From the IMG/VR virus record IMGVR_UViG_3300036770_003943, positions 1 to 64,000 of that record: a stretch of DNA of 64,000 bases; one strand, given 5' to 3'. Positions within the stretch are counted from its first letter, which is position 1; the number at the start of each line of letters is the position of its first letter. This document shows, piece by piece, positions 1,554-38,941 of the stretch. Position numbers and translations under genes: made by a program. The notes beneath the pieces are model-generated. The model was given only the letters and a program-made list of their open reading frames with translations, had not been told where the DNA came from and did no database searches.

Positions 1554-2471
1554 TTATCCACCAAAAGGAATAAATTCTAATCCAGTTGATTGAATTCCTA
1601 CTAGATCAATGTCATTCAATAGCTCAGGTCGTTTAGCAGCAACAAGTAAAACATCAGCTTGACTGTAACCATATTTTTCAATAGTTTCAACTATTTCAGC
1701 TACCTGTTGAGCTGTGGCCTGTACACCAAATGTATTTTTCCATACTTGTTTGGCAAATGTTTCATTGCTTACTCCACCTGCGTCGTTTTTGTATTCATCG
1801 CTGGTTAAAATTTTAGCAGCAATTTCTTTATCAGTCCAGCCAAGTGTTTCTGCTAAAAATAATCCTGCGCCAATATAAGCTGGTGTTACATCTGTTTTAC
1901 CTACGGCTGCTGACATCATGGCATAAATTTTTCCGGCTGTGCCGCCATTATCAATATCAAATGCTAGATGTTTATCTTGAAATTTAAGTCGTTCTACATC
2001 GTGTAGAGAAAATTCAATTATTGATGATAATGTGCTGGTTATCGCCAAATTACCGTCATTGTAAATAATATTAAATTTATTTTTAGTATCGTTAAAAGTG
2101 TAAGTGTCAACGGCACTGGTTCCAGTTACATCAACTAAAATATCAATAATGCCATCGCCAATTCTTCCTAGGCCAGCCTGTGAAAATGTAGCGATTTTAC
2201 CTTGTAATCCTACTGTGTTAACAGTAAGCAGCAAATCATTATCAGGACTTAGGCCGCCAAGAGTAGTCCCAGGAATAGTCACTGTATTTCCTGGTATGTA
2301 GCCAGTGCCTAGATTTTCACTGTCTAATGACACATTATAGTAGCCATTTGTTTTGACTACATCAAATTTAGCGCCGTCGCCTGGCTCACTAGTTCCGTTT
2401 AGTCCGGTAACATTTTGATAACTGACGTTAACTGGTTTATCTTTAATACTAATGCTAGTAGTTATTGGCAT
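1554..2471 (-). CDS. Chimeric protein: virion-type beta-rich N-terminal domain plus DUF4214-like C-terminal domain
   Basis: GTGY.PG.TVTI.G..LGG..P.NDL repeat unit typical of phage structural proteins; DVERLKFQD..LAFDID..G.AG..Y and IDLVG...TG.EF.P tail typical of DUF4214 proteins. Confidence 0.6.
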   Translation of the reverse strand: MPITTSISIKDKPVNVSYQNVTGLNGTSEPGDGAKFDVVKTNGYYNVSLDSENLGTGYIPGNTVTIPGTTLGGLSPDNDLLLTVNTVGLQGKIATFSQAGLGRIGDGIIDILVDVTGTSAVDTYTFNDTKNKFNIIYNDGNLAITSTLSSIIEFSLHDVERLKFQDKHLAFDIDNGGTAGKIYAMMSAAVGKTDVTPAYIGAGLFLAETLGWTDKEIAAKILTSDEYKNDAGGVSNETFAKQVWKNTFGVQATAQQVAEIVETIEKYGYSQADVLLVAAKRPELLNDIDLVGIQSTGLEFIPFGG

Positions 2472-2557: not shown

Positions 2558-3304
2558 CTAACTCATTGCTATGTCGAACATCCAACTGTCCCAAACATTA
2601 TTTTTAATATAATCAAAGGGCATATAAAAGTAACCTTTTTCTCCCCAGTCCTCACCAAAGCTATTTCTAATTATTAACTTTTTTTGATCTAGATCATAAC
2701 CAACCACTGTGACTGCATGGCCGCCGATAATTTGTTCGTAAGCCTGGGGTAAGGGTAATTCATACTTACCGGGCAGCTCTAAATCATAAAAGCTATTATA
2801 TACACTCATGCTAATAACCACTGGATATTCCAAGTTGACAGCATAGAGTATATCGTCTAAATTTTTAACTCTATAATATTTGTTTATCATACGAGTTCGA
2901 GCATCCATGTAGCTATCTAGACTAGGTGCCTCACTAAATTTATAGGTTATGTAGGGCCAAATTGATTCAGCACATACACCAAAGTGATTTACACTTTTAA
3001 TACCATATCTTACATAGGTTCCAGCATCTTCATCAACCATATTATCATAGGCTCTAGCATTATAGTAAACAAATAATCGACTCAGGTCAACAAATCTATC
3101 CTTGAATAGTCGGTTGACCATGAGTTCAAAAGCTCCTACGACAGCTTGCCCAACACAACTGCCAAGATGCAATTGATCTTCTATCGGACTACACCAATCT
3201 CTGAGATCAACTTTATTTTTTATTTTTGTTTGATCGAATCGACACACTAGGTCTCTATTATCTGGTCTGTCCGGTCTTACTGTAAAAGTTGATCTAGAGA
3301 TCAT
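2558..3304 (-). CDS. Papain-family (C1A) cysteine peptidase
   Basis: DLR.W..PIEDQ..LGSCVG (catalytic Cys), GGHAV (His), RNSFG..WG..GYF (Asn). Confidence 0.9.
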   Translation of the reverse strand: MISRSTFTVRPDRPDNRDLVCRFDQTKIKNKVDLRDWCSPIEDQLHLGSCVGQAVVGAFELMVNRLFKDRFVDLSRLFVYYNARAYDNMVDEDAGTYVRYGIKSVNHFGVCAESIWPYITYKFSEAPSLDSYMDARTRMINKYYRVKNLDDILYAVNLEYPVVISMSVYNSFYDLELPGKYELPLPQAYEQIIGGHAVTVVGYDLDQKKLIIRNSFGEDWGEKGYFYMPFDYIKNNVWDSWMFDIAMS

Positions 3305-3305
3305 A

Positions 3306-4001
3306 TCACATTATTGTTGGATCTCGTAACATCGGTGTAGGCGACGGTGTTGGCATGCTAGTAAATCTATTGGGAAACTGTTGTATGATCCTATCAGCAA
3401 ATAATGTACTAAATTCAGAAATGAATTCATTTAATTTGTTTGTAGACAATGTGATTTCTGTAGCATTCTTAGCTTTCCTTGCCTTTACTTGTCCAATAAT
3501 ACCGTCTGCCAGTTTTGCTAACAAGTCTCGTGTAGGTTGCCATTGGTATTGCTGATTAAAGGTATTCAATGACGTAGCTAATTCATTTAACACTGTATTC
3601 ATTTTAGTTTGACTATATGCTGCGTCTGTACCTGTTTTTACAGCATGGACTAGTAATGCGGTAAGCACAGGAATACTACGCATGGCTAGATTAATTCGTT
3701 CTCCGAATTCACTGTTGTAAAAAGGCTTGGTCATATTGCCCAATCTATCTACGTCAGAGTAAATAGCTTCAAAATTATTGACTAAACTGTCTTCGGTACC
3801 ATCTACACTCATTATCATACCATTTAATTTATTAGCCAAGTTGTCAAAGTAGTTTGAAACATTTGATCTAAAAGTTAATTCATCGAAAGTTTCGTTAGTA
3901 GGTATCCTACTACGCCTGCGTTCTAAGCTAGATTTGATTTGATTGGCTAGCGGATGATCAAAATGTTCTTCTACTATGGTGTGAGTAATCTTTTTATACA
4001 C
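3306..4001 (-). CDS. Hypothetical protein with N-terminal MYKKITHTIVEEHFDHP leader
   Basis: 231-aa ORF with RBS GGAG; shares its leader with the adjacent ORF. Confidence 0.8.
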   Translation of the reverse strand: MYKKITHTIVEEHFDHPLANQIKSSLERRRSRIPTNETFDELTFRSNVSNYFDNLANKLNGMIMSVDGTEDSLVNNFEAIYSDVDRLGNMTKPFYNSEFGERINLAMRSIPVLTALLVHAVKTGTDAAYSQTKMNTVLNELATSLNTFNQQYQWQPTRDLLAKLADGIIGQVKARKAKNATEITLSTNKLNEFISEFSTLFADRIIQQFPNRFTSMPTPSPTPMLRDPTIM

Positions 4002-4010
4002 AATTTTCTC

Positions 4011-4274
4011 CTAAGGTTTGCTTACGTATTCGTCGCAAATATAAGTTGGTCTTACCAATGCGTCCCATCTAACACACATGCTAGTTTCTGGATTATAGGC
4101 TAAACAATTGGCACAACTACTTTCTCCGCTGGCTAACACGTAGCTTTGTGGTAATTTATACGGTATGACAGATCCGTCGTCGTAATACCTTTGCGGGTAG
4201 TGCCAGCTTGTTTTAGAGTTGGGAGGATTGTCAAAATGCTCCTCTACAATGGTATGTGTTATGCGCTTATACAT
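4011..4274 (-). CDS. Small protein: MYKRITHTIVEEHFDNP leader plus four-Cys (HiPIP-like) domain
   Basis: ATG at 4274 overlaps the upstream stop (TAATG coupling); C-x2-C-x8-C-x12-C spacing. Confidence 0.7.
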   Translation of the reverse strand: MYKRITHTIVEEHFDNPPNSKTSWHYPQRYYDDGSVIPYKLPQSYVLASGESSCANCLAYNPETSMCVRWDALVRPTYICDEYVSKP

Positions 4275-4900
4275 TACATTATCCACCAATTACTGTTACG
4301 ATATACCACCTGCACACTTTGGTATGGTGTACTAATTACGTAATTGATCTTGTTATCTATTTTTTCTCCCACCTGCGGTTGAATGGTAATTTTGCCCGAA
4401 CCTTGCCCATATTCATCTTTGATAATATAAACACGCCCATCTACTGCTGTGGGCAATGTTATAGTGATATTGCTAATACTGCTAACACCAATATATTCGT
4501 CTGTTAATGTAGCAGTATAGTTGGTTGTAGTTCCGTAGACATTTATAAGATCTGCTCCGTAACTACTGATAGTAATGTCACCTGTGCCACCGCTTATGCT
4601 GATGCCTGCTCCAGCTGTTAGGCTTAGAACGCCTGTGTTTTTTATGGTAAAAGATGTAGCAGGCCCATCACTTACCAATGACAGTACGCTGATGCCAACA
4701 TCAGCTGTGGGTGTAACACTGGTAACAACTCTGTCGCCGTTGTCAAATAATTCATTGGCTTCTACTGTGTTAAATGTGACATCGGCTGTGGGGCTGAGAT
4801 CCTGATTTAGGCTGATCACTCCATTGGTAACAGTGATATAATTACCAACTTGAACTACACCTAGTTCTGTTTCTGATGTCAATGGTGCTAGATATGACAT
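4274..4900 (-). CDS. Putative virion fibre/decoration protein
   Basis: T-rich beta-type sequence; C-terminal ~85-aa domain paralogous to that of 4911-5543. Confidence 0.6.
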   Translation of the reverse strand: MSYLAPLTSETELGVVQVGNYITVTNGVISLNQDLSPTADVTFNTVEANELFDNGDRVVTSVTPTADVGISVLSLVSDGPATSFTIKNTGVLSLTAGAGISISGGTGDITISSYGADLINVYGTTTNYTATLTDEYIGVSSISNITITLPTAVDGRVYIIKDEYGQGSGKITIQPQVGEKIDNKINYVISTPYQSVQVVYRNSNWWIM

Positions 4901-4910
4901 AATTAATTCC

Positions 4911-5543
4911 TTATACTATAAACCAATTGCCATCGCGGCAAAATAAATGAACACTTTGCCACGGCACTTCCATGACGTATTCTGACTCACCATCAATGGT
5001 ACTTCCGTCACTGGCGGTAACAGTTACTTTACGATTGCCGATAGGCGGGCCCATTTCAACCTTTACAATAATTTGATGACTATCTGGGCAATCTGAGGGA
5101 AGAGTGATAGTAACCGGTCCAGAACTATTAATGCCAATATAACAATCATTGTCATCAGCAGTGTAGTCTTGTGTAACCAAAATTGCTTCGCAGTGGTAAT
5201 CACAGTCTCCAGGCGGTCCAGGAGGGCCAGCTGGTCCTGTGTCACCTTGAGGACCTTGTTCTCCAGGCGGTCCTGGCGGTCCTTCAGGTCCTTGAATGCC
5301 TTGTTCTCCAGGAGGTCCAGGCGGACCAGGAGGTCCAGGAGGTCCGGGTGGACAGTCGCAGTTTTTCTCTTGGTTTTGATTAATGATGACGGTATCATTA
5401 CCTGCTCCAGTGTCAATGTCAATTCTTGCGCCTGCTAGAACTCTTTGAGCCTGTTGAACAAGTTCAGGATTAGGTCTTTCTCCAGATGTTAATTTTAAAA
5501 GAGCTTCGTTGAGTTCAACTAGTCTTCTTTCCATGGGCGTCAT
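4911..5543 (-). CDS. Collagen-like (Gly-X-Y) protein with C-terminal beta domain
   Basis: GPP/GEQ/GDT triplet run at ~5213-5350 flanked by Cys pairs; ATG at 5543 preceded by GGAG. Confidence 0.8.
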
Positions 5544-5553
5544 AGCAGTCTCC

Positions 5554-5581
5554 AAAAAGCAGCAGCCTCGTGAGCCGCTGC
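5554..5581 (-). terminator. Intrinsic terminator after 5607-6212
   Basis: GCAGCGGCT-CACGA-GGCTGCTGC stem followed by TTTTT on the minus strand. Confidence 0.65.
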
Positions 5582-5606: not shown

Positions 5607-6212
5607 TTAACCTACGTTATTGCTGGTTGCACGTTGGCCAACACCTAATTGTGTGCCAAAGTTGACCATACTATTGCGTGTGTCATTTAACTGACTGCCA
5701 AATGCCTGTAGTTGGCTTTGTAGTGAAGCAACTTGGCTTTGACCAGCAAAGTCTCTCCAATAACGACGTCCCCAACGTTCTTCTACCAGTTCGCTGTTGC
5801 GTTCTACTAGAGCACGATTTAGATCGTTGTACTTGAGATCATTGATCAGAGCACGTGTCTTCTCACCGTCTGCGTCAATCTTGTCGCTGACATAGGTCGT
5901 CTGCTTTTGCATTTCAACTTGATTTCTCAGTGCGTTGATTTCACTGTCCTTGGCTGCTGTGGCAAATCCTGCTACCATTTGTTGTTGCTGTGCTATAACC
6001 TGAGCACGAAGGTCCATGGTGTCACGTCCCACTGTAAACAAACGATCAGCAATGCTCATTTGATGATTATTAAGCGCCGATGTTAGTGTATCTGTGTTAC
6101 TACTAGTTGATGTTATAACATCATGAGCATTTTTATTGGCTTCTAATTGAATTTCAGATGCCTGTTTTTGTTGCTCAAAACGGATATCATTTAATTGGTC
6201 TTCTACTGCCAT
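5607..6212 (-). CDS. Hypothetical helical/coiled-coil protein
   Basis: 201-aa ORF with AGGAG RBS, Q/N/A rich. Confidence 0.8.
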   Translation of the reverse strand: MAVEDQLNDIRFEQQKQASEIQLEANKNAHDVITSTSSNTDTLTSALNNHQMSIADRLFTVGRDTMDLRAQVIAQQQQMVAGFATAAKDSEINALRNQVEMQKQTTYVSDKIDADGEKTRALINDLKYNDLNRALVERNSELVEERWGRRYWRDFAGQSQVASLQSQLQAFGSQLNDTRNSMVNFGTQLGVGQRATSNNVG

Positions 6213-6311: not shown

Positions 6312-6977
6312 TTATCTAGCAGTCAGAGCCAATTGTGTTCTATTACGCACACACATATTTTTCATTACCGCACTGACATGAATCTTTACAGTGCTTTCAC
6401 TTATTTTTAACACCGTGGCAATTTGCTTATTACTGAGTCCGCGATTGGCAATAAGATCAAATACCTGCCGTTGCCTATCAGTCAGATGAATTTCGTTTGT
6501 TTTGTTGGGTCTTATTGTATTACCTGACAAATTTTGTATAATATGCTTTGGCCAATAGGATTTCTGTTCCAACAATGTTGTTATAGACTGTTTACCTTCG
6601 TCGATACCATAATCAGACAGCAATGGAAAAAGTCCGTCAACCCCAGATTTTTGCATCTCTTTGATATCAGATATATGCGTGTCTTTACCCACACCAAGAA
6701 CGACCAAAGGCCTTTTATCAACACTGTTGAATTTGAACAAGGTATCCATCATTAACATAAATTCACTTAAAGAACTGTGTTTTTTTACAAAGGTAGAAGA
6801 GATTGCAATGACATCTATGCCAGATTTCAAATAGCTGTTGAGTTCTTTGAAATTCTCACAGTACTTTACTTTCACTGGCCAATCTTCAAAGTCACTTTCT
6901 TTGACATTGTTTTCATCTAAATACTGTCGATAATTTTCACGAAAAATTACTAACCTGGGTTTTTTGTTTGCTGGCAT
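6312..6977 (-). CDS. NarL/FixJ (LuxR-HTH) family transcriptional regulator with degenerate receiver domain
   Basis: LTDRQRQVFDLIANRGLSNKQIATVLKISESTVKIHVSAVMK is a clear LuxR-type HTH; probable ATG at 6977 after TAAGGAG. Confidence 0.85.
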   Translation of the reverse strand: MPANKKPRLVIFRENYRQYLDENNVKESDFEDWPVKVKYCENFKELNSYLKSGIDVIAISSTFVKKHSSLSEFMLMMDTLFKFNSVDKRPLVVLGVGKDTHISDIKEMQKSGVDGLFPLLSDYGIDEGKQSITTLLEQKSYWPKHIIQNLSGNTIRPNKTNEIHLTDRQRQVFDLIANRGLSNKQIATVLKISESTVKIHVSAVMKNMCVRNRTQLALTAR

Positions 6978-7153
6978 AATTAACTCCTTATTAACAATAC
7001 TTAAAGTGTTTAATACTTTCAACTATCCAAACTTAGTATTATTATTAATGAAGTATTATTAGTAGTATTAGCTTCTATTTTAACGATATCGTAGTAAAAT
7101 GTCTACAAAATTTATATAACTTTAGTAAGTATTTGTAAGCAAGATTGCCAATG

Positions 7154-7827: not shown

Positions 7828-8223
7828 TCATTGAAATGTTTGCGTAAACCTGCGACCTCGATATTCAAATGTAACTATTTCACCAGCTAAAACTTGAACA
7901 GGCTGTTGACTACAACGTATCTGCATTTCTACTGTGCCACCGTCGTTTTGACTACCCAGTTGTCCGCCAATTACAGCACCAGCTGCTGTGGCAATTTCTC
8001 TGCCATGACCTCCGCCAATTTGATTACCAATGGCAGCACCGACAATGGCGCCGACTACACCACCTCCTGTATTTCGTCTTTCAACTGGGACCTGAGTACA
8101 CTGTTGTTGATAGCTAGTAACATATCTAGGCTGACGTGCCACAACAACAGCAACATCTTGTGTCATTGACTGGGCGTAGACGGTTGGACTAATTAACAAA
8201 AGTGATAGAATAAGTTTTTTCAT
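7828..8223 (-). CDS. Glycine-zipper 2TM envelope protein with signal peptide
   Basis: MKKLILSLLLISPTVYA signal; GGVVGAIVGAAIGNQIGGGHGR..ATAAGAVIGGQLG zipper. Confidence 0.85.
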   Translation of the reverse strand: MKKLILSLLLISPTVYAQSMTQDVAVVVARQPRYVTSYQQQCTQVPVERRNTGGGVVGAIVGAAIGNQIGGGHGREIATAAGAVIGGQLGSQNDGGTVEMQIRCSQQPVQVLAGEIVTFEYRGRRFTQTFQ

Positions 8224-8229
8224 TTTATG

Positions 8230-8442
8230 TTATAGAATAGTTGCAATGTCTTGCTCAATGGTCATTTTACCTTCGCAGGCTACGTTCCATTTAACTACCC
8301 CATCTTCTATAGTTTTTTCACCGTACATCGGTACAAAAATTTTAAAATCTTTTACCAAATGTTCTACACCATTTTCAAAAATTCTCCACACATAATCACT
8401 TGAACCATGGTGAGTATTATACCTAATATGATACTTTTTCAT
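8230..8442 (-). CDS. Hypothetical protein
   Basis: 70-aa ORF coupled to neighbours. Confidence 0.65.
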   Translation of the reverse strand: MKKYHIRYNTHHGSSDYVWRIFENGVEHLVKDFKIFVPMYGEKTIEDGVVKWNVACEGKMTIEQDIATIL

Positions 8443-8768
8443 TGTGCCTCTGCTCGAATTAAAACTTCTTGTGCTGCTCCGTTTACTAACATAATTACTT
8501 TCTTATATGTTATTCCATCAATAACAACATATTGTGGATTTTGAACTATTTGTGGTTGCTGAACAATTACAGGATCCGGACGAGTTGCCGCATAGACCAC
8601 TGTGCCACCTATTAAGGCGGGAACGATCCAGCTATGATTATGATGCCAGTGATGGGCAGGCGGAGCCCAATGTCTGTGCTGTCTGTGTCCATGATGTGGT
8701 CCTGCTAGTGTTTGACCGGCATATGTTATGCCTAGAGCTGCTACTAAACCTATAACAAAATGTTTCAT
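8439..8768 (-). CDS. Secreted His-rich small protein
   Basis: Signal peptide ending ...QTLA; GPHHGHRQHRHW..HHWHHNH; W.VPALIGG.V hydrophobic patch. Confidence 0.7.
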   Translation of the reverse strand: MKHFVIGLVAALGITYAGQTLAGPHHGHRQHRHWAPPAHHWHHNHSWIVPALIGGTVVYAATRPDPVIVQQPQIVQNPQYVVIDGITYKKVIMLVNGAAQEVLIRAEAQ

Positions 8769-36838: not shown

Positions 36839-38941
36839 TTAGAATACTTTGTTAAACATTACACCAGCACCAGTAGCAGTATTACCTGCTTGCCCTGCTA
36901 CATTATATTGTCTGGCCAGGTTCACTGTCAATCTTGCGTTTTGATTATTAATCACAGTGTAACCTAATACTAGATCCAAAGGACGAATATCTGATTTCAG
37001 ATTCACAATTTCCTTAGTTACAATAGGATCCGCACTAACTGTACCATCAGCCAATTCAGTAAACTTGTAATCTGTTACTGCGCTCACAGTAGCTGAACCA
37101 TTCTTAATGGCAACCGGACTAACTAAGCTAAGACTAACTTGATCTCGAACACTATCTTTGAATACTATATTGTGATGCGCTATACCAACCTTCCAAGTCT
37201 GGCTAGTAATAGCCCCATTGAATTGGACAAGACTACCACTTAGGTTACTGACCTGCGTAACAGCCAAACCATAATGGCCAAACAAACTTGTATCACCAAA
37301 CTGTCGGGCTAGCCCTAATTGGGCATAACTAGTGCTGCTGTCACCATAGGCTAGACTACCTGCTCCGTGATTACCCAAAAAGCCTGAACGTTCAGACAAG
37401 CCTCCGAGTTGGAAACTCGCTGTAGTTGAACCCATATAGTAATCTACTTGGTTAGCTAAACCGTTATCAGACTTCATTAATTTTACTGAGTAGTCAGAGC
37501 CTGTGGGCAATACAACTTCACTATAGTTATAGGGTGTTAAGGCTAACCAAGCACTGCCGTATTGGTAAGTTTGTAGTTTATTTACAGCAGTAGCTTTAGT
37601 CAAATCAACTGCGTAATGACGCCCAATTTCATCTAAAGTCATTGTATTCTTTAATACATAACTGTTGGATAATCCTGTGTTAACTGAATTTACTGTACCT
37701 GTTCCAGCAATGCTAGAACCTGCTACTAGCCCTTGACTAGGCATGGCCATTTTTAATGTACCTGTTGGCTTAGTTGCCTGGCTGAAGTTGACTAACCCAT
37801 ATCCATAAACTTCATCAACGCCAGGGGCACCTAAATCTGTAGCAGTAGTCTTAACTAGACTGACAATCTGTGCCGCACTAAGTTGTGGCCAAACCTGTTT
37901 GATTAGTGCAACACCCCCACTGACATAGGCAGCGGCCGGACTTGTACCAGAGACATAACTTGTCACACTTCCTGGAATAATCTGGTTTGGAGTTGCGGTG
38001 GGAATATTTTCTCCTGGTGCTACTACGTAAAAATCTTTTACACTGTATTTGTCGGCACAAACTGTGCCTTGTACGTCAGAACAAAAGCCCCCAGCCCGGT
38101 TGCTAAAACTGCTAATTACATTCTTGTTATTCACACTACCTACAATCAGCATCCTGCCTCCTAACATAAGGTTACCTACTGAATCGGTTTTAGTAGCATA
38201 AGCACCCGGATATTGGCTATAAGCCAAGCCTTGGTTGCCTGCCGCGGCAACTATTACCATGGTCTTACTAGCATTGGCAAAATTTGCCAAGTCTTGGGCC
38301 GAGTTACTGTATAAGTCTGTATACGGAGCAGGAGCCTTGTATACTCCTGGAGACATTTTTATTACTCCACGCTGAAACGCAGTGTCATAAGTGGCGCCTA
38401 AACTTAGATTTGCTACAGTAGCACCGTTAGCTTCGGCCCAAGTTAATGCTTGATTGATGCCGTTTGTGCTAATACCATTAGTAACAGGAACCCATTTTTT
38501 CTGGTAATTATTCCAAACTAACCCTTGTGCGACCTGAGCCAGTAATAACTTAGCTCCAGGTGCTACGCCTACCGTTCCAATATTATCCAACTTACCTGCC
38601 GCCACTGCCGCCATCTGCGTTCCATGTGTACTCCAGCTAGCTGTGAAGAAAAGATTTGAACGAAAATTATTTGGATTAAGGCGAGTGTTTTCAGCTACAA
38701 TTTCACTAAAGTTTCTAAATCCTAATACCTGACCTCTAAGGTCATTATGAGTAATATCAAACCCACTGTCTAGTATAGCAATCTTAACACCGGTTCCAGT
38801 AATACCTCGACTCCATGCTTCTGTTACACCGGTTTGGTTTAACACCGATGTGCTTAGTGATTCTTTATTTGCCTGAGCTAGCACACTTTGACTAATTGCC
38901 AAAGCTATCGATACGCTAAGAACTTTTGCTTTAAATTTCAT
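36839..38941 (-). CDS. Secreted subtilisin-like (S8) serine protease with C-terminal beta-rich domain
   Basis: Signal peptide; AILDSG (Asp), HGTQMA (His), AAAGN, SGTS.AA..VSG (Ser); terminal Phe. Confidence 0.92.
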   Translation of the reverse strand: MKFKAKVLSVSIALAISQSVLAQANKESLSTSVLNQTGVTEAWSRGITGTGVKIAILDSGFDITHNDLRGQVLGFRNFSEIVAENTRLNPNNFRSNLFFTASWSTHGTQMAAVAAGKLDNIGTVGVAPGAKLLLAQVAQGLVWNNYQKKWVPVTNGISTNGINQALTWAEANGATVANLSLGATYDTAFQRGVIKMSPGVYKAPAPYTDLYSNSAQDLANFANASKTMVIVAAAGNQGLAYSQYPGAYATKTDSVGNLMLGGRMLIVGSVNNKNVISSFSNRAGGFCSDVQGTVCADKYSVKDFYVVAPGENIPTATPNQIIPGSVTSYVSGTSPAAAYVSGGVALIKQVWPQLSAAQIVSLVKTTATDLGAPGVDEVYGYGLVNFSQATKPTGTLKMAMPSQGLVAGSSIAGTGTVNSVNTGLSNSYVLKNTMTLDEIGRHYAVDLTKATAVNKLQTYQYGSAWLALTPYNYSEVVLPTGSDYSVKLMKSDNGLANQVDYYMGSTTASFQLGGLSERSGFLGNHGAGSLAYGDSSTSYAQLGLARQFGDTSLFGHYGLAVTQVSNLSGSLVQFNGAITSQTWKVGIAHHNIVFKDSVRDQVSLSLVSPVAIKNGSATVSAVTDYKFTELADGTVSADPIVTKEIVNLKSDIRPLDLVLGYTVINNQNARLTVNLARQYNVAGQAGNTATGAGVMFNKVF

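What the first reader, a model, noticed from the sequence alone, without database searches (positions are those of the whole stretch)
3306..4274. Two adjacent unrelated proteins share a 17-aa N-terminal leader under purifying selection, directly upstream of a papain-like protease
MYKKITHTIVEEHFDHP and MYKRITHTIVEEHFDNP are 15/17 identical, yet 9 of the identical codons differ synonymously. The peptide, not the DNA, is therefore being conserved. The rest of the two proteins is unrelated (helical 231 aa vs four-Cys 87 aa). The next gene is a C1A peptidase. By inference this is a modular targeting/cleavage tag: either a substrate leader for the co-encoded protease, or a capsid-targeting sequence cut after IVE by the head protease.
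Basis: partly seen in the sequence, partly recalled or inferred. Interest (0 to 1): 0.65.

Follow-up and report, generated by a model that had tools for sequence, protein, structure and literature searches.

The report
Portable 17-residue leader in jumbo phage
Two neighbouring, unrelated proteins of an uncultured T4-like jumbo phage start with the same almost invariant 17-residue peptide, a portable tag found on at least four kinds of protein in one conserved gene cassette. It most likely acts like phage T4's capsid-targeting sequence, though the papain-like protease encoded beside it remains a serious alternative partner.

Summary
ORF1 (3306-4001, minus strand, 231 aa) and ORF2 (4011-4274, minus strand, 87 aa) share 15 of 17 N-terminal residues, with 9 synonymous codon changes. 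Their bodies are unrelated: a helical bundle and a HiPIP-like four-Cys domain.

A leader-only profile found 160 cluster representatives among 1.84 billion proteins, nearly all starting at residue 1. The leader sits on at least four body types. M1, Y2, H7, E11 and E12 are invariant, while synonymous sites are randomised.

All leader genes lie in one conserved cassette:
- a GerE/LuxR regulator
- small fibre-like proteins
- one to four leader proteins
- a xylellain-like C1 peptidase

The genome also encodes a T4-type prohead protease (Peptidase_S77). The leader keeps I9-x-E11, the same form as the conserved [LI]-x-E site at the inferred maturation site of the clade's major capsid protein.

Best reading (about 0.4): a capsid-targeting-like propeptide. 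Main rival (about 0.25): a recognition peptide for the cassette's C1 peptidase. Co-folding supports ORF1's body, not its leader, binding that peptidase.

I rate it a new variant of a known kind. The mechanism is unproven.

The parts
3951..4001 (-). Leader of ORF1, codons 1-17 (MYKKITHTIVEEHFDHP), GTG start
   Evidence: In the AF2 model it is coil with pLDDT about 65 and is not packed on the body.
3306..4001 (-). ORF1: 231-aa leader-tagged helical-bundle protein (family A of the cassette)
   Evidence: 157 homologues at E<=0.01. AF2 pLDDT is 90.9, with helices over residues 41-208. No informative fold match was found.
3615..3785 (-). ORF1 residues 73-129: the most conserved block of the body and the predicted contact surface for the C1 peptidase
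   Evidence: Conservation from the alignment. Co-fold interface (ipSAE 0.82 versus best control 0.48).
4224..4274 (-). Leader of ORF2, codons 1-17 (MYKRITHTIVEEHFDNP), ATG start overlapping the stop of the upstream gene
   Evidence: AF2 pLDDT is about 52.
4011..4274 (-). ORF2: 87-aa leader-tagged protein with a HiPIP-like four-Cys body (C54, C57, C67, C80)
   Evidence: 27 homologues. The four Cys are invariant. The top Foldseek PDB hits are HiPIPs, with probability 0.94-0.96 and rmsd 2.0-2.5 A over about 50 residues. A leaderless homologue exists in phage HTVC111P.
2558..3304 (-). Xylellain-like papain-family (C1) cysteine peptidase without a long prodomain; its start lies 1 nt after ORF1's stop
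   Evidence: PF00112 at E 3e-15. Q44, C50, H196 and N214 are invariant in 23 homologues. The closest solved chain is 3OIS at E 2e-54.
4274..4900 (-). Small fibre-like protein (208 aa), a conserved cassette member with 2-6 paralogues in relatives
   Evidence: tblastn against the related loci. Contigs of a freshwater metatranscriptome run cover it.
4911..5555 (-). Collagen-repeat fibre-like protein (214 aa) with the same C-terminal domain type
   Evidence: PF01391 at E 5e-10. Conserved in the cassette.
5607..6212 (-). 201-aa protein, no leader; found by tblastn only in the closest relative L058 (51% identity), and unrelated to ORF1
6312..7022 (-). GerE/LuxR-type regulator at the head of the cassette
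   Evidence: PF00196 at E 1e-16. Found at the same position in about 25 related loci.

Best explanation
The shared 17 residues form a portable, unstructured N-terminal tag. Its consensus is M-Y-K-K-I-T-H-x-I-x-E-E-H-F-D-H-P, and in many relatives weaker similarity continues to about residue 27.

The tag directs several unrelated proteins of one accessory cassette to a common destination. The most likely destination is the assembling prohead core, as with the capsid targeting sequence of phage T4's internal proteins and Alt. There the phage's T4-type prohead protease (Peptidase_S77) would cut the tag after I9-x-E11, leaving the cargo inside the head to be ejected with the DNA.

Candidate cargo:
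- ORF1's helical bundle
- the HiPIP-like ORF2
- leader-only mini-proteins
- a further beta-domain family

ORF1's body is predicted to bind the leaderless C1 peptidase encoded next to it, so the peptidase could enter the head carried on ORF1.

Shown: the conservation, modularity and disorder of the tag, the cassette, the presence of the S77 gene, and the I-x-E pattern. Inferred: targeting to the prohead, cleavage by S77, and carriage of the peptidase.
For: 1. **Selection on the peptide.** Across 52 leaders from about 30 phage contigs, M1, Y2, H7, E11 and E12 are at 100% and K3, I9 and H13 at 98%, while their codons are mixed (for example TAT 24 / TAC 28).
2. **Leader versus body.** Nearly all invariant columns of the ORF1 family lie in the leader, whereas the bodies average 30-32% identity. 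In a search seeded only with bodies, 55 of 58 hits carry the intact leader, and the other 3 are N-terminally short, two of them on contigs of about 1 kb or less.
3. **Modularity.** A leader-only profile finds 160 cluster representatives in 1.84 billion proteins, almost all at residue 1. The bodies are the helical family, the HiPIP-like family, a 146-171-aa beta family, and 51-67-aa mini-proteins. ORF2's body occurs without a leader in a podophage.
4. **Disorder.** The leader is unstructured in both AF2 models.
5. **Head protease.** The genome has a T4-like head module with a Peptidase_S77 gene at genome 115061-115693 (E 2e-25), next to the portal, scaffold and major capsid protein (MCP) genes. 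Two related leader-bearing contigs also have it.
6. **Cleavage motif.** Three clade members keep [LI]-x-E followed by A or S at the inferred MCP maturation site. The leader keeps I9 and E11 while position 10 varies (V, T, I, M, K, R).
7. **Precedent.** T4 capsid targeting sequences (CTSs) are propeptides of about 10-20 residues that bind the prohead core and are removed by gp21; they are the only conserved part of very diverse internal proteins (PMC7411985, PMC3012670). SPN3US gp53 and gp54 share an identical 15-residue N-terminus with AXE-12 although only 34% identical overall (PMC5694885).
8. **Carriage of the peptidase.** Co-fold of the C1 peptidase with ORF1 gave ipSAE 0.82 against a best control of 0.48. 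That mark was reached by 58 of 80 solved complexes and 2 of 110 mismatched pairs; the counts hold only roughly because my own alignments were used. The runs share at least 62% of contacts and partner pLDDT is at least 80. The interface is ORF1 residues 73-129.
Against: - No proteomic or cleavage data exist. [LI]-x-E is a short, common motif.
- Conservation continues past the putative cut: E12, H13 and F14 are near-invariant. A cleavage site alone does not require that.
- All leader genes found lie in one cassette, about 110 kb from the head genes, together with a peptidase, a regulator and fibre-like proteins. In five large related records no leader gene occurs elsewhere.
- ORF1 and ORF2 are neutral to acidic (pI 5.1-6.9). 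As I recall them, T4's internal proteins are basic.
- One leader family has a weak match to the C-terminus of a tail protein (phrog_17312, E 7e-5). An external location would not fit an internal-protein tag.
- Close relatives lack the helical ORF1 yet keep a 55-aa leader mini-protein abutting the peptidase gene. That weakens the idea that the peptidase is carried on ORF1.
Confidence: 0.4

Rival explanations
1. The leader is the recognition and cleavage peptide, or an occupant of the active-site cleft, for the cassette's own xylellain-like C1 peptidase. Several cassette proteins would then be matured, released or held by that peptidase. The logic resembles leader-guided processing of bacteriocin and RiPP precursors by clan-CA peptidases, but here it would act on folded proteins. 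ORF1's body would serve as an exosite.
For: - Every leader gene found lies in the peptidase's cassette. In most loci the nearest upstream gene of the peptidase carries a leader, whatever its body: helical, HiPIP-like, a 96-aa protein, or a 55-aa mini-protein.
- Close relatives keep only a leader mini-protein plus the peptidase.
- The co-fold supports a physical complex of ORF1 and the peptidase.
- The peptidase has an intact Q-C-H-N active site and no long prodomain.
- Aromatic F14 (F, Y, W or H) followed by a variable residue 15, or Y2-K3, would suit a papain-type S2 pocket (the specificity is from general knowledge of the family).
- There is a weak Peptidase_C39_2 hit at E 2e-4, below the family cut-off.
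Against: - The confident co-fold interface involves ORF1's body, not the leader or the catalytic residues.
- L023 has two leader proteins but no peptidase anywhere in its 36-kb contig; the slot downstream of the leader gene holds two large ORFs of 1023 and 930 aa with no family match.
- In L021 and L024 fibre genes separate the leader genes from the peptidase.
- The adjacency can be explained by inherited gene order plus deletions.
- A propeptide that does not touch its own body gives no obvious reason for cleavage unless it also targets.
- There is no GG motif and no ABC exporter.
Confidence: 0.25
2. The leader is an uncleaved docking peptide, binding by strand or helix addition. It would tether the tagged proteins, and through ORF1 the peptidase, to a cassette-encoded structure such as the small fibre-like proteins on the virion surface.
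For: - Fibre-like paralogues are the most constant cassette members besides the leader genes.
- A third leader family has a weak match to a tail-protein C-terminus.
- Invariant residues span the whole 14-17 residues rather than a short cleavage site.
Against: - No evidence of contact was obtained.
- The fibre-like proteins give no Pfam or PHROG match beyond the collagen repeat.
- Helical-bundle and HiPIP-like bodies are not typical virion appendages.
- Known N-terminal anchor domains of phage fibres are far longer (general knowledge).
Confidence: 0.15
3. The peptide acts in another way: as a nascent-chain translational regulator, as an N-terminal degron for a host or phage AAA+ protease, or as a His/Glu/Asp metal-binding motif.
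For: - The peptide is conserved at the amino-acid level independently of what follows it, and P17 is frequent.
- H7, E11, E12, H13, D15 and H16 are potential metal ligands. Several bodies are metal-related: the HiPIP-like domain and His-rich repeats.
- A ClpX-like gene lies about 9 kb from the cassette in L002.
Against: - There is no specific support for any of the three.
- Known arrest peptides and degrons are much less invariant across such divergence (general knowledge).
- None of these readings explains the confinement to one cassette.
Confidence: 0.08
4. The shared N-terminus is only a remnant of a recent local duplication or gene conversion and has no function of its own.
For: The two genes are adjacent and the shared part lies at the 5' ends.
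Against: Synonymous sites are saturated between the two copies. The same peptide is kept on proteins whose bodies have diverged to 22-30% identity, and on unrelated bodies, across about 160 protein clusters.
Confidence: 0.02

Closest known systems
[quoted passage not shown]
   Same: - A short N-terminal propeptide (10-20 residues in T4, 11-17 here).
- It is the only conserved part of otherwise diverse proteins.
- It ends in x-x-Glu, in a phage with a gp21-type (S77) prohead protease.
- The cargo includes enzymes (PMC7411985, PMC3012670).
   Different: - No evident sequence similarity to the T4 CTS.
- Conservation runs 6 or more residues past the putative cut.
- The tagged genes sit in one cassette with a regulator, fibre-like proteins and a papain-like peptidase.
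- The bodies are not basic.
- Packaging and cleavage are untested.
Identical N-terminal propeptides of the ejection-protein paralogues gp53 and gp54 of Salmonella phage SPN3US (phiKZ gp93 is processed at SLE-13)
   Same: About 15 N-terminal residues are kept identical while the rest diverges to 34% identity. They contain the protease motif at residues 12-15 and are interpreted as CTS-like (PMC5694885).
   Different: Those proteins are paralogues of one family with propeptides over 100 residues long. Here the bodies are unrelated, and the phage belongs to the T4/PA5oct-like lineage, not the phiKZ-like one.
Double-glycine leaders of bacteriocin and RiPP precursors cut by clan-CA C39 peptidases
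   Same: A conserved N-terminal leader sits on variable downstream parts, encoded beside a papain-fold cysteine peptidase, with a response-regulator-type gene in the cluster.
   Different: - No GG motif and no ABC transporter.
- The peptidase is family C1 (xylellain-like).
- The main bearer is a 230-aa folded helical bundle.
- The setting is viral.
Encapsulin cargo-loading peptides
   Same: A short disordered terminal peptide shared by unrelated cargo, including helical-bundle and Fe-S proteins, loads them into an HK97-fold shell (general knowledge).
   Different: Those peptides are usually C-terminal and are not cleaved. No encapsulin-type shell gene lies in the cassette. ORF1's body has no conserved di-iron ligands.
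Xylellain (PDB 3OIS), a bacterial C1A cysteine peptidase
   Same: It is the closest solved relative of the neighbouring peptidase (E 2e-54), aligned over residues 9-242 with the same catalytic residues.
   Different: The phage enzyme is predicted to pair with a separate helical-bundle protein. Its substrates are unknown.

Membership tests
T4-type capsid targeting sequence (functional class) | Short (about 10-20 aa) peptide at the extreme N-terminus | tested here: met
   The leader starts at residue 1 in nearly all of the 150 listed hits of the 160 found. The conserved core is 17 aa and the putative cut lies after residue 11.
T4-type capsid targeting sequence (functional class) | Shared by otherwise unrelated or hypervariable proteins | tested here: met
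   At least four body types. The ORF1 and ORF2 bodies show no similarity: BLASTP finds nothing and hhalign gives 0.1%.
T4-type capsid targeting sequence (functional class) | Ends at the prohead protease's motif (cleavage C-terminal to Glu; [LI]-x-E in T4) | tested here: met
   I9 is at 98%, position 10 is variable and E11 is at 100%. The clade's major capsid protein keeps [LI]-x-E followed by A or S at its inferred maturation site. This is sequence-level evidence only.
T4-type capsid targeting sequence (functional class) | The genome encodes a gp21-type prohead protease and a T4-like head module | tested here: met
   PF03420 at E 2e-25, at genome 115196-115627, beside the portal, scaffold and major capsid protein genes.
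T4-type capsid targeting sequence (functional class) | Directs the protein into the prohead core and is removed in the mature virion | not testable with these tools
   This needs virion proteomics or N-terminomics, or packaging of a leader fusion.
Double-glycine leader / C39 peptidase systems | GG (or GA/GS) cleavage motif at the end of the leader | tested here: not met
   No Gly appears in the 17-residue consensus.
Double-glycine leader / C39 peptidase systems | C39 peptidase domain, usually fused to an ABC exporter | tested here: not met
   The peptidase matches PF00112 above its cut-off. PF13529 scores 22.4, below its 24-bit cut-off. No transporter gene appears in the cassette.
Papain family, Peptidase_C1 (neighbouring gene 2558-3304) | Family profile above its cut-off, and the catalytic Gln-Cys-His-Asn | tested here: met
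   PF00112 scores 57 bits against a 20.7 cut-off. Q44, C50, H196 and N214 are invariant in 23 sequences. 3OIS matches at E 2e-54.
High-potential iron-sulfur protein (ORF2 body) | Four cluster-binding Cys in a HiPIP fold | tested here: inconclusive
   Four Cys are invariant. The top PDB fold hits are all HiPIPs, but with E 0.06-0.5 (probability 0.94-0.96, TM 0.4-0.5) on a model of pLDDT 76. There is no Pfam hit. Cluster binding is untested.

The most novel reading that the evidence does not exclude
The leader is not a capsid tag. It is the address label of a previously undescribed, self-contained viral system built around a papain-like peptidase. A GerE-type regulator would control a set of leader-tagged folded proteins (two helical-bundle families, a HiPIP-like Fe-S protein, mini-proteins) and small fibres. 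The tagged proteins would be recognised, processed or assembled by the C1 peptidase held on ORF1's body. That would be leader-guided protein maturation of the bacteriocin/RiPP kind, transplanted to folded proteins in a jumbo phage.
Probability: 0.2. Interest if true: 0.75.

Novelty: new variant of a known kind. Interest (0 to 1): 0.55.

Why it matters
- **A testable packaging tag.** If the leader is a capsid-targeting tag, it would be, to my knowledge, the first one outside the T-even and phiKZ-like phages that can be defined at the sequence level. It is sharply defined, with about 12 near-invariant residues. That makes internal or ejected proteins predictable from sequence in an uncultured clade of T4-like jumbo phages from freshwater, aquaculture, wetland and subsurface metagenomes. 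T4's CTS is already used to load foreign proteins into heads, so this tag could be tried the same way.
- **An unusual payload.** The reading would imply that a papain-like protease and an Fe-S protein are delivered into the host with the DNA.
- **If the peptidase is the partner instead.** The cassette would then be a new leader-guided processing system for folded proteins.
- **Either way.** The tag gives an experimental handle on a conserved cassette of otherwise unannotated genes.

Tried and rejected
- **Phage database searches.** tblastn and blastn of the region and of ORF1 found no match. ORF2 matched only leaderless pelagiphage homologues. The fibre-like gene found nothing.
- **Fold of ORF1.** Foldseek PDB, BFVD and the VIA-align wide search returned only generic helical bundles, designed proteins, or the protein's own family. 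The ESM Atlas feature search gave only unnamed clusters scoring 0.85-0.87.
- **Annotations.** Pfam and PHROGs give nothing for ORF1 or ORF2. The JGI label 'Zn-dependent protease with MMP-like domain' on some ORF1 homologues has no support: no Pfam match, and no invariant His or Glu in the body alignment.
- **Prokaryote genomes.** A scan of 185,579 species found no relative, so the family looks purely viral or metagenomic.
- **Literature.** A full-text search for the leader string found no paper.
- **Timing of expression.** The T4 late-promoter motif TATAAATA occurs only 10 times in the genome and lies upstream of 3 genes, so it gave no timing information for the cassette.
- **Context of other leader proteins.** The third leader family (P0261, P0272) lies only on contigs of 1.5 kb or less with no DNA served.
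- **Peptidase homologues elsewhere.** Those in Burkholderia phage FLC9 and in a 595-kb uncultured phage have no cassette or leader nearby.
- **The 201-aa protein at 5607-6212.** It is not a leaderless ORF1 paralogue.
- **Reads.** The runs laid were contigs only. They show presence and rearranged relatives, but no transcript ends.

Full report
**1. The observation.**
On the minus strand, ORF1 (3306..4001, 231 aa, GTG start behind a GGAGA ribosome-binding site) begins MYKKITHTIVEEHFDHP. ORF2 (4011..4274, 87 aa) begins MYKRITHTIVEEHFDNP, and its ATG overlaps the TAA of the upstream gene.

Fifteen of 17 residues agree. Nine identical residues use different synonymous codons, and the start codons differ as well. 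Among all 31,375 pairs of predicted N-termini in the 231,776-bp genome this pair ranks first. A six-frame scan finds no third copy.

The bodies are unrelated. BLASTP finds nothing at E<=100 and profile-profile probability is 0.1%. ORF1 models as a confident helical bundle (pLDDT 90.9). ORF2 models as a small domain with four invariant Cys whose best PDB matches are all HiPIPs.

The next gene (2558..3304) is a papain-family peptidase. It matches PF00112, Q44, C50, H196 and N214 are invariant, and its closest solved relative is the xylellain entry 3OIS.

**2. What the genome is.**
The window is the first 64 kb of an IMG/VR virus record estimated about 65% complete.
- It encodes a tail sheath and a large terminase 54% identical to that of the Pseudomonas phage PA5oct group.
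- It has a T4-like head module outside the window: portal, a Peptidase_S77 prohead protease (genome 115061-115693), scaffold and major capsid protein (MCP).
- The one run that holds the whole stretch, possibly the source sample, is labelled a subsurface metagenome. Partial matches come from aquaculture, freshwater and wetland runs.

**3. The leader across relatives.**
ORF1 has 157 homologues and ORF2 has 27, and essentially all of them begin with the same peptide. That search is seeded by shared words and is therefore biased towards the leader, so I ran two controls.

- A leader-only profile against 1.84 billion cluster representatives found only 160 proteins. The match starts at residue 1 in nearly all of the 150 listed.
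- A search seeded only with ORF1 bodies returned 58 proteins at 22-36% body identity. Of these, 55 have the intact leader and the other 3 are N-terminally short, two of them on contigs of about 1 kb or less.

In the ORF1 family nearly all invariant alignment columns lie in the leader, while the body averages about 30% identity.

Across 52 leaders with DNA in hand, M1, Y2, H7, E11 and E12 are invariant and K3, I9 and H13 are at 98%. Synonymous codons are used almost at random. Positions 8 and 10 vary freely. That set was itself fetched through leader patterns, so the percentages are somewhat inflated.

Selection therefore acts on the peptide. No prokaryote genome in the 185,579-species collection carries the family.

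**4. Modularity.**
The leader occurs on the following bodies:
- the helical ORF1 family, often as two paralogues per phage
- the HiPIP-like ORF2 family
- a 146-171-aa family with a beta-rich C-terminus that weakly resembles the end of a tail protein
- mini-proteins of 51-67 aa that are little more than leader, linker and a '..KDIM' tail
- His-rich peptides

ORF2's body exists without any leader in Pelagibacter podophage HTVC111P gp24. In both AF2 models the leader is coil with pLDDT 50-65 and does not pack on the body. These are the properties of a linear, portable motif.

**5. The cassette.**
In about 30 viral contigs the leader genes lie in one conserved cassette. It begins with a GerE/LuxR regulator. 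One or two leader-tagged helical proteins follow in many loci; in this window that slot holds an untagged 201-aa protein. Next come two to six small fibre-like proteins, some with collagen repeats. An optional leader-tagged HiPIP-like, mini or other protein follows, then the leader-tagged helical protein (ORF1 type), and finally the C1 peptidase.

In five large related records no leader gene lies outside the cassette.

There are exceptions:
- L023 has two leader proteins but no peptidase in its 36-kb contig.
- L021 and L024 have fibre genes between the leader genes and the peptidase.
- L047 and L058 lack the helical ORF1 but keep a 55-aa leader mini-protein abutting the peptidase gene. A contig in run X2 that joins 3190 to 4231 may have the same arrangement.

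**6. ORF1 and the peptidase.**
Co-folding the peptidase with ORF1 gave ipSAE 0.82 (three runs, 0.81-0.83) against a best control of 0.48. That mark was reached by 58 of 80 solved complexes and 2 of 110 mismatched pairs. The counts hold only roughly because my own alignments were used. The runs share at least 62% of contacts and partner pLDDT is at least 80.

The confident interface is ORF1 residues 73-129 against peptidase residues 85-90, 107-108 and 126-136. That stretch is the most conserved block of ORF1's body. Neither the leader nor the catalytic residues are among the confident contacts. The model supports binding but does not prove it.

**7. Mechanism.**
A tag this conserved, on unrelated bodies and free of its own body, implies recognition by one common partner. 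The best-precedented partner in this lineage is the prohead core together with the S77 protease.

- T4's CTS is a 10-20-residue N-terminal propeptide. It binds the core, is removed by gp21, and is the only conserved part of very diverse internal proteins (PMC7411985, PMC3012670).
- These proteases cut after Glu (PMC5694885).
- SPN3US gp53 and gp54 keep an identical 15-residue N-terminus with AXE-12 (PMC5694885).
- Here I9 and E11 are fixed while residue 10 varies.
- The clade's MCP keeps [LI]-x-E followed by A or S at its inferred maturation site.

I therefore rank a CTS-like propeptide first, at about 0.4, with the peptidase possibly carried in on ORF1.

The main rival, at about 0.25, is that the cassette's own C1 peptidase recognises or cuts the leader. 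It is favoured by the strict confinement to the cassette and by relatives that keep only leader plus peptidase. It is weakened by the co-fold geometry and by L023.

A retained docking peptide for the fibre-like proteins (about 0.15) and other roles (about 0.1) remain open. A functionless duplication remnant is contradicted by the codon data.

**8. Known or new.**
The kind of feature is known: a short cleavable N-terminal targeting propeptide in T4-type phages. This instance has no evident similarity to T4's CTS. It is unusually long and invariant, it extends past the putative cut, and it is tied to a cassette with a papain-like peptidase, a regulator and fibre-like proteins, which is not described for any CTS system I know of. 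I found no paper containing the motif. I rate it a new variant of a known kind. Membership of the CTS class is met for every sequence-level criterion and untested for the defining functional one.

**9. Limits.**
- All related sequences come from metagenomes and most contigs are fragments, so absences are weak evidence.
- Several retrievals were seeded by the leader itself.
- No cleavage, packaging or expression data exist. The runs laid were contigs only.

Noticed in passing
window 4011-4223 (ORF2 residues 18-87): The ORF2 body looks like a miniature HiPIP. It has four invariant Cys and its top PDB fold hits are all HiPIPs. A leaderless 69-aa homologue is gp24 of Pelagibacter phage HTVC111P. 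A phage-encoded Fe-S mini-protein of unknown role.
   Followed up: partly
window 3306-3330; L069 5350-5553; L071 1621-1776: ORF1's C-terminus (..RDPTIM) and the ends of the 51-67-aa leader mini-proteins (..KDIM) share a tail. The DNA there (..GATATAATGTAAGGAG..) is also the ribosome-binding region of the next gene, so the constraint may act on the nucleotides rather than the peptide.
   Followed up: partly
window 4274-4900 and 4911-5555; 2-6 paralogues in L002-L035: A family of small fibre-like proteins, one with GPP collagen repeats, shares a C-terminal domain with no Pfam or PHROG match beyond the collagen repeat. The 4274-4900 gene is covered at 94-99% by contigs of a freshwater metatranscriptome run (X6).
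   Followed up: partly
window 36839-38941 (minus strand): A 700-aa subtilase (Peptidase_S8, E 3e-40). It is a third protease gene in this genome, besides the S77 and C1 enzymes.
   Followed up: no
window 7828-8223 and 8439-8768 (minus strand): A 131-aa protein with an N-terminal hydrophobic, signal-like stretch and a glycine-zipper domain (Rick_17kDa_Anti). Next to it is a 109-aa protein with a similar hydrophobic N-terminus and a His-rich stretch (HHGHRQHRH..HHWHHNH).
   Followed up: no
genome 77144-95223 (outside the window): Three tandem giant genes (2244, 1862 and 1879 aa) share the N-terminus MLDIVLSFPAP... They are the only other strongly shared N-terminus in the genome and are probably whole-length paralogues.
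   Followed up: no
genome 207539-208879, 214920-216230 and 219325-220404 (outside the window): Three proteins share the N-terminal octapeptide MRLLELKQ/E, matching at 8 of 16 positions. This may be another small shared N-terminal motif, or they may be paralogues.
   Followed up: no
window 3999-4001: ORF1 is the only one of the 52 leader genes examined that starts with GTG rather than ATG.
   Followed up: yes
window 1554-2471 (minus strand): A 305-aa protein just downstream of the peptidase also occurs in relatives at 50% identity, but upstream of the regulator (L002, L003, L005). Relatives carry a weak DUF4214 label. Its function is unknown.
   Followed up: no
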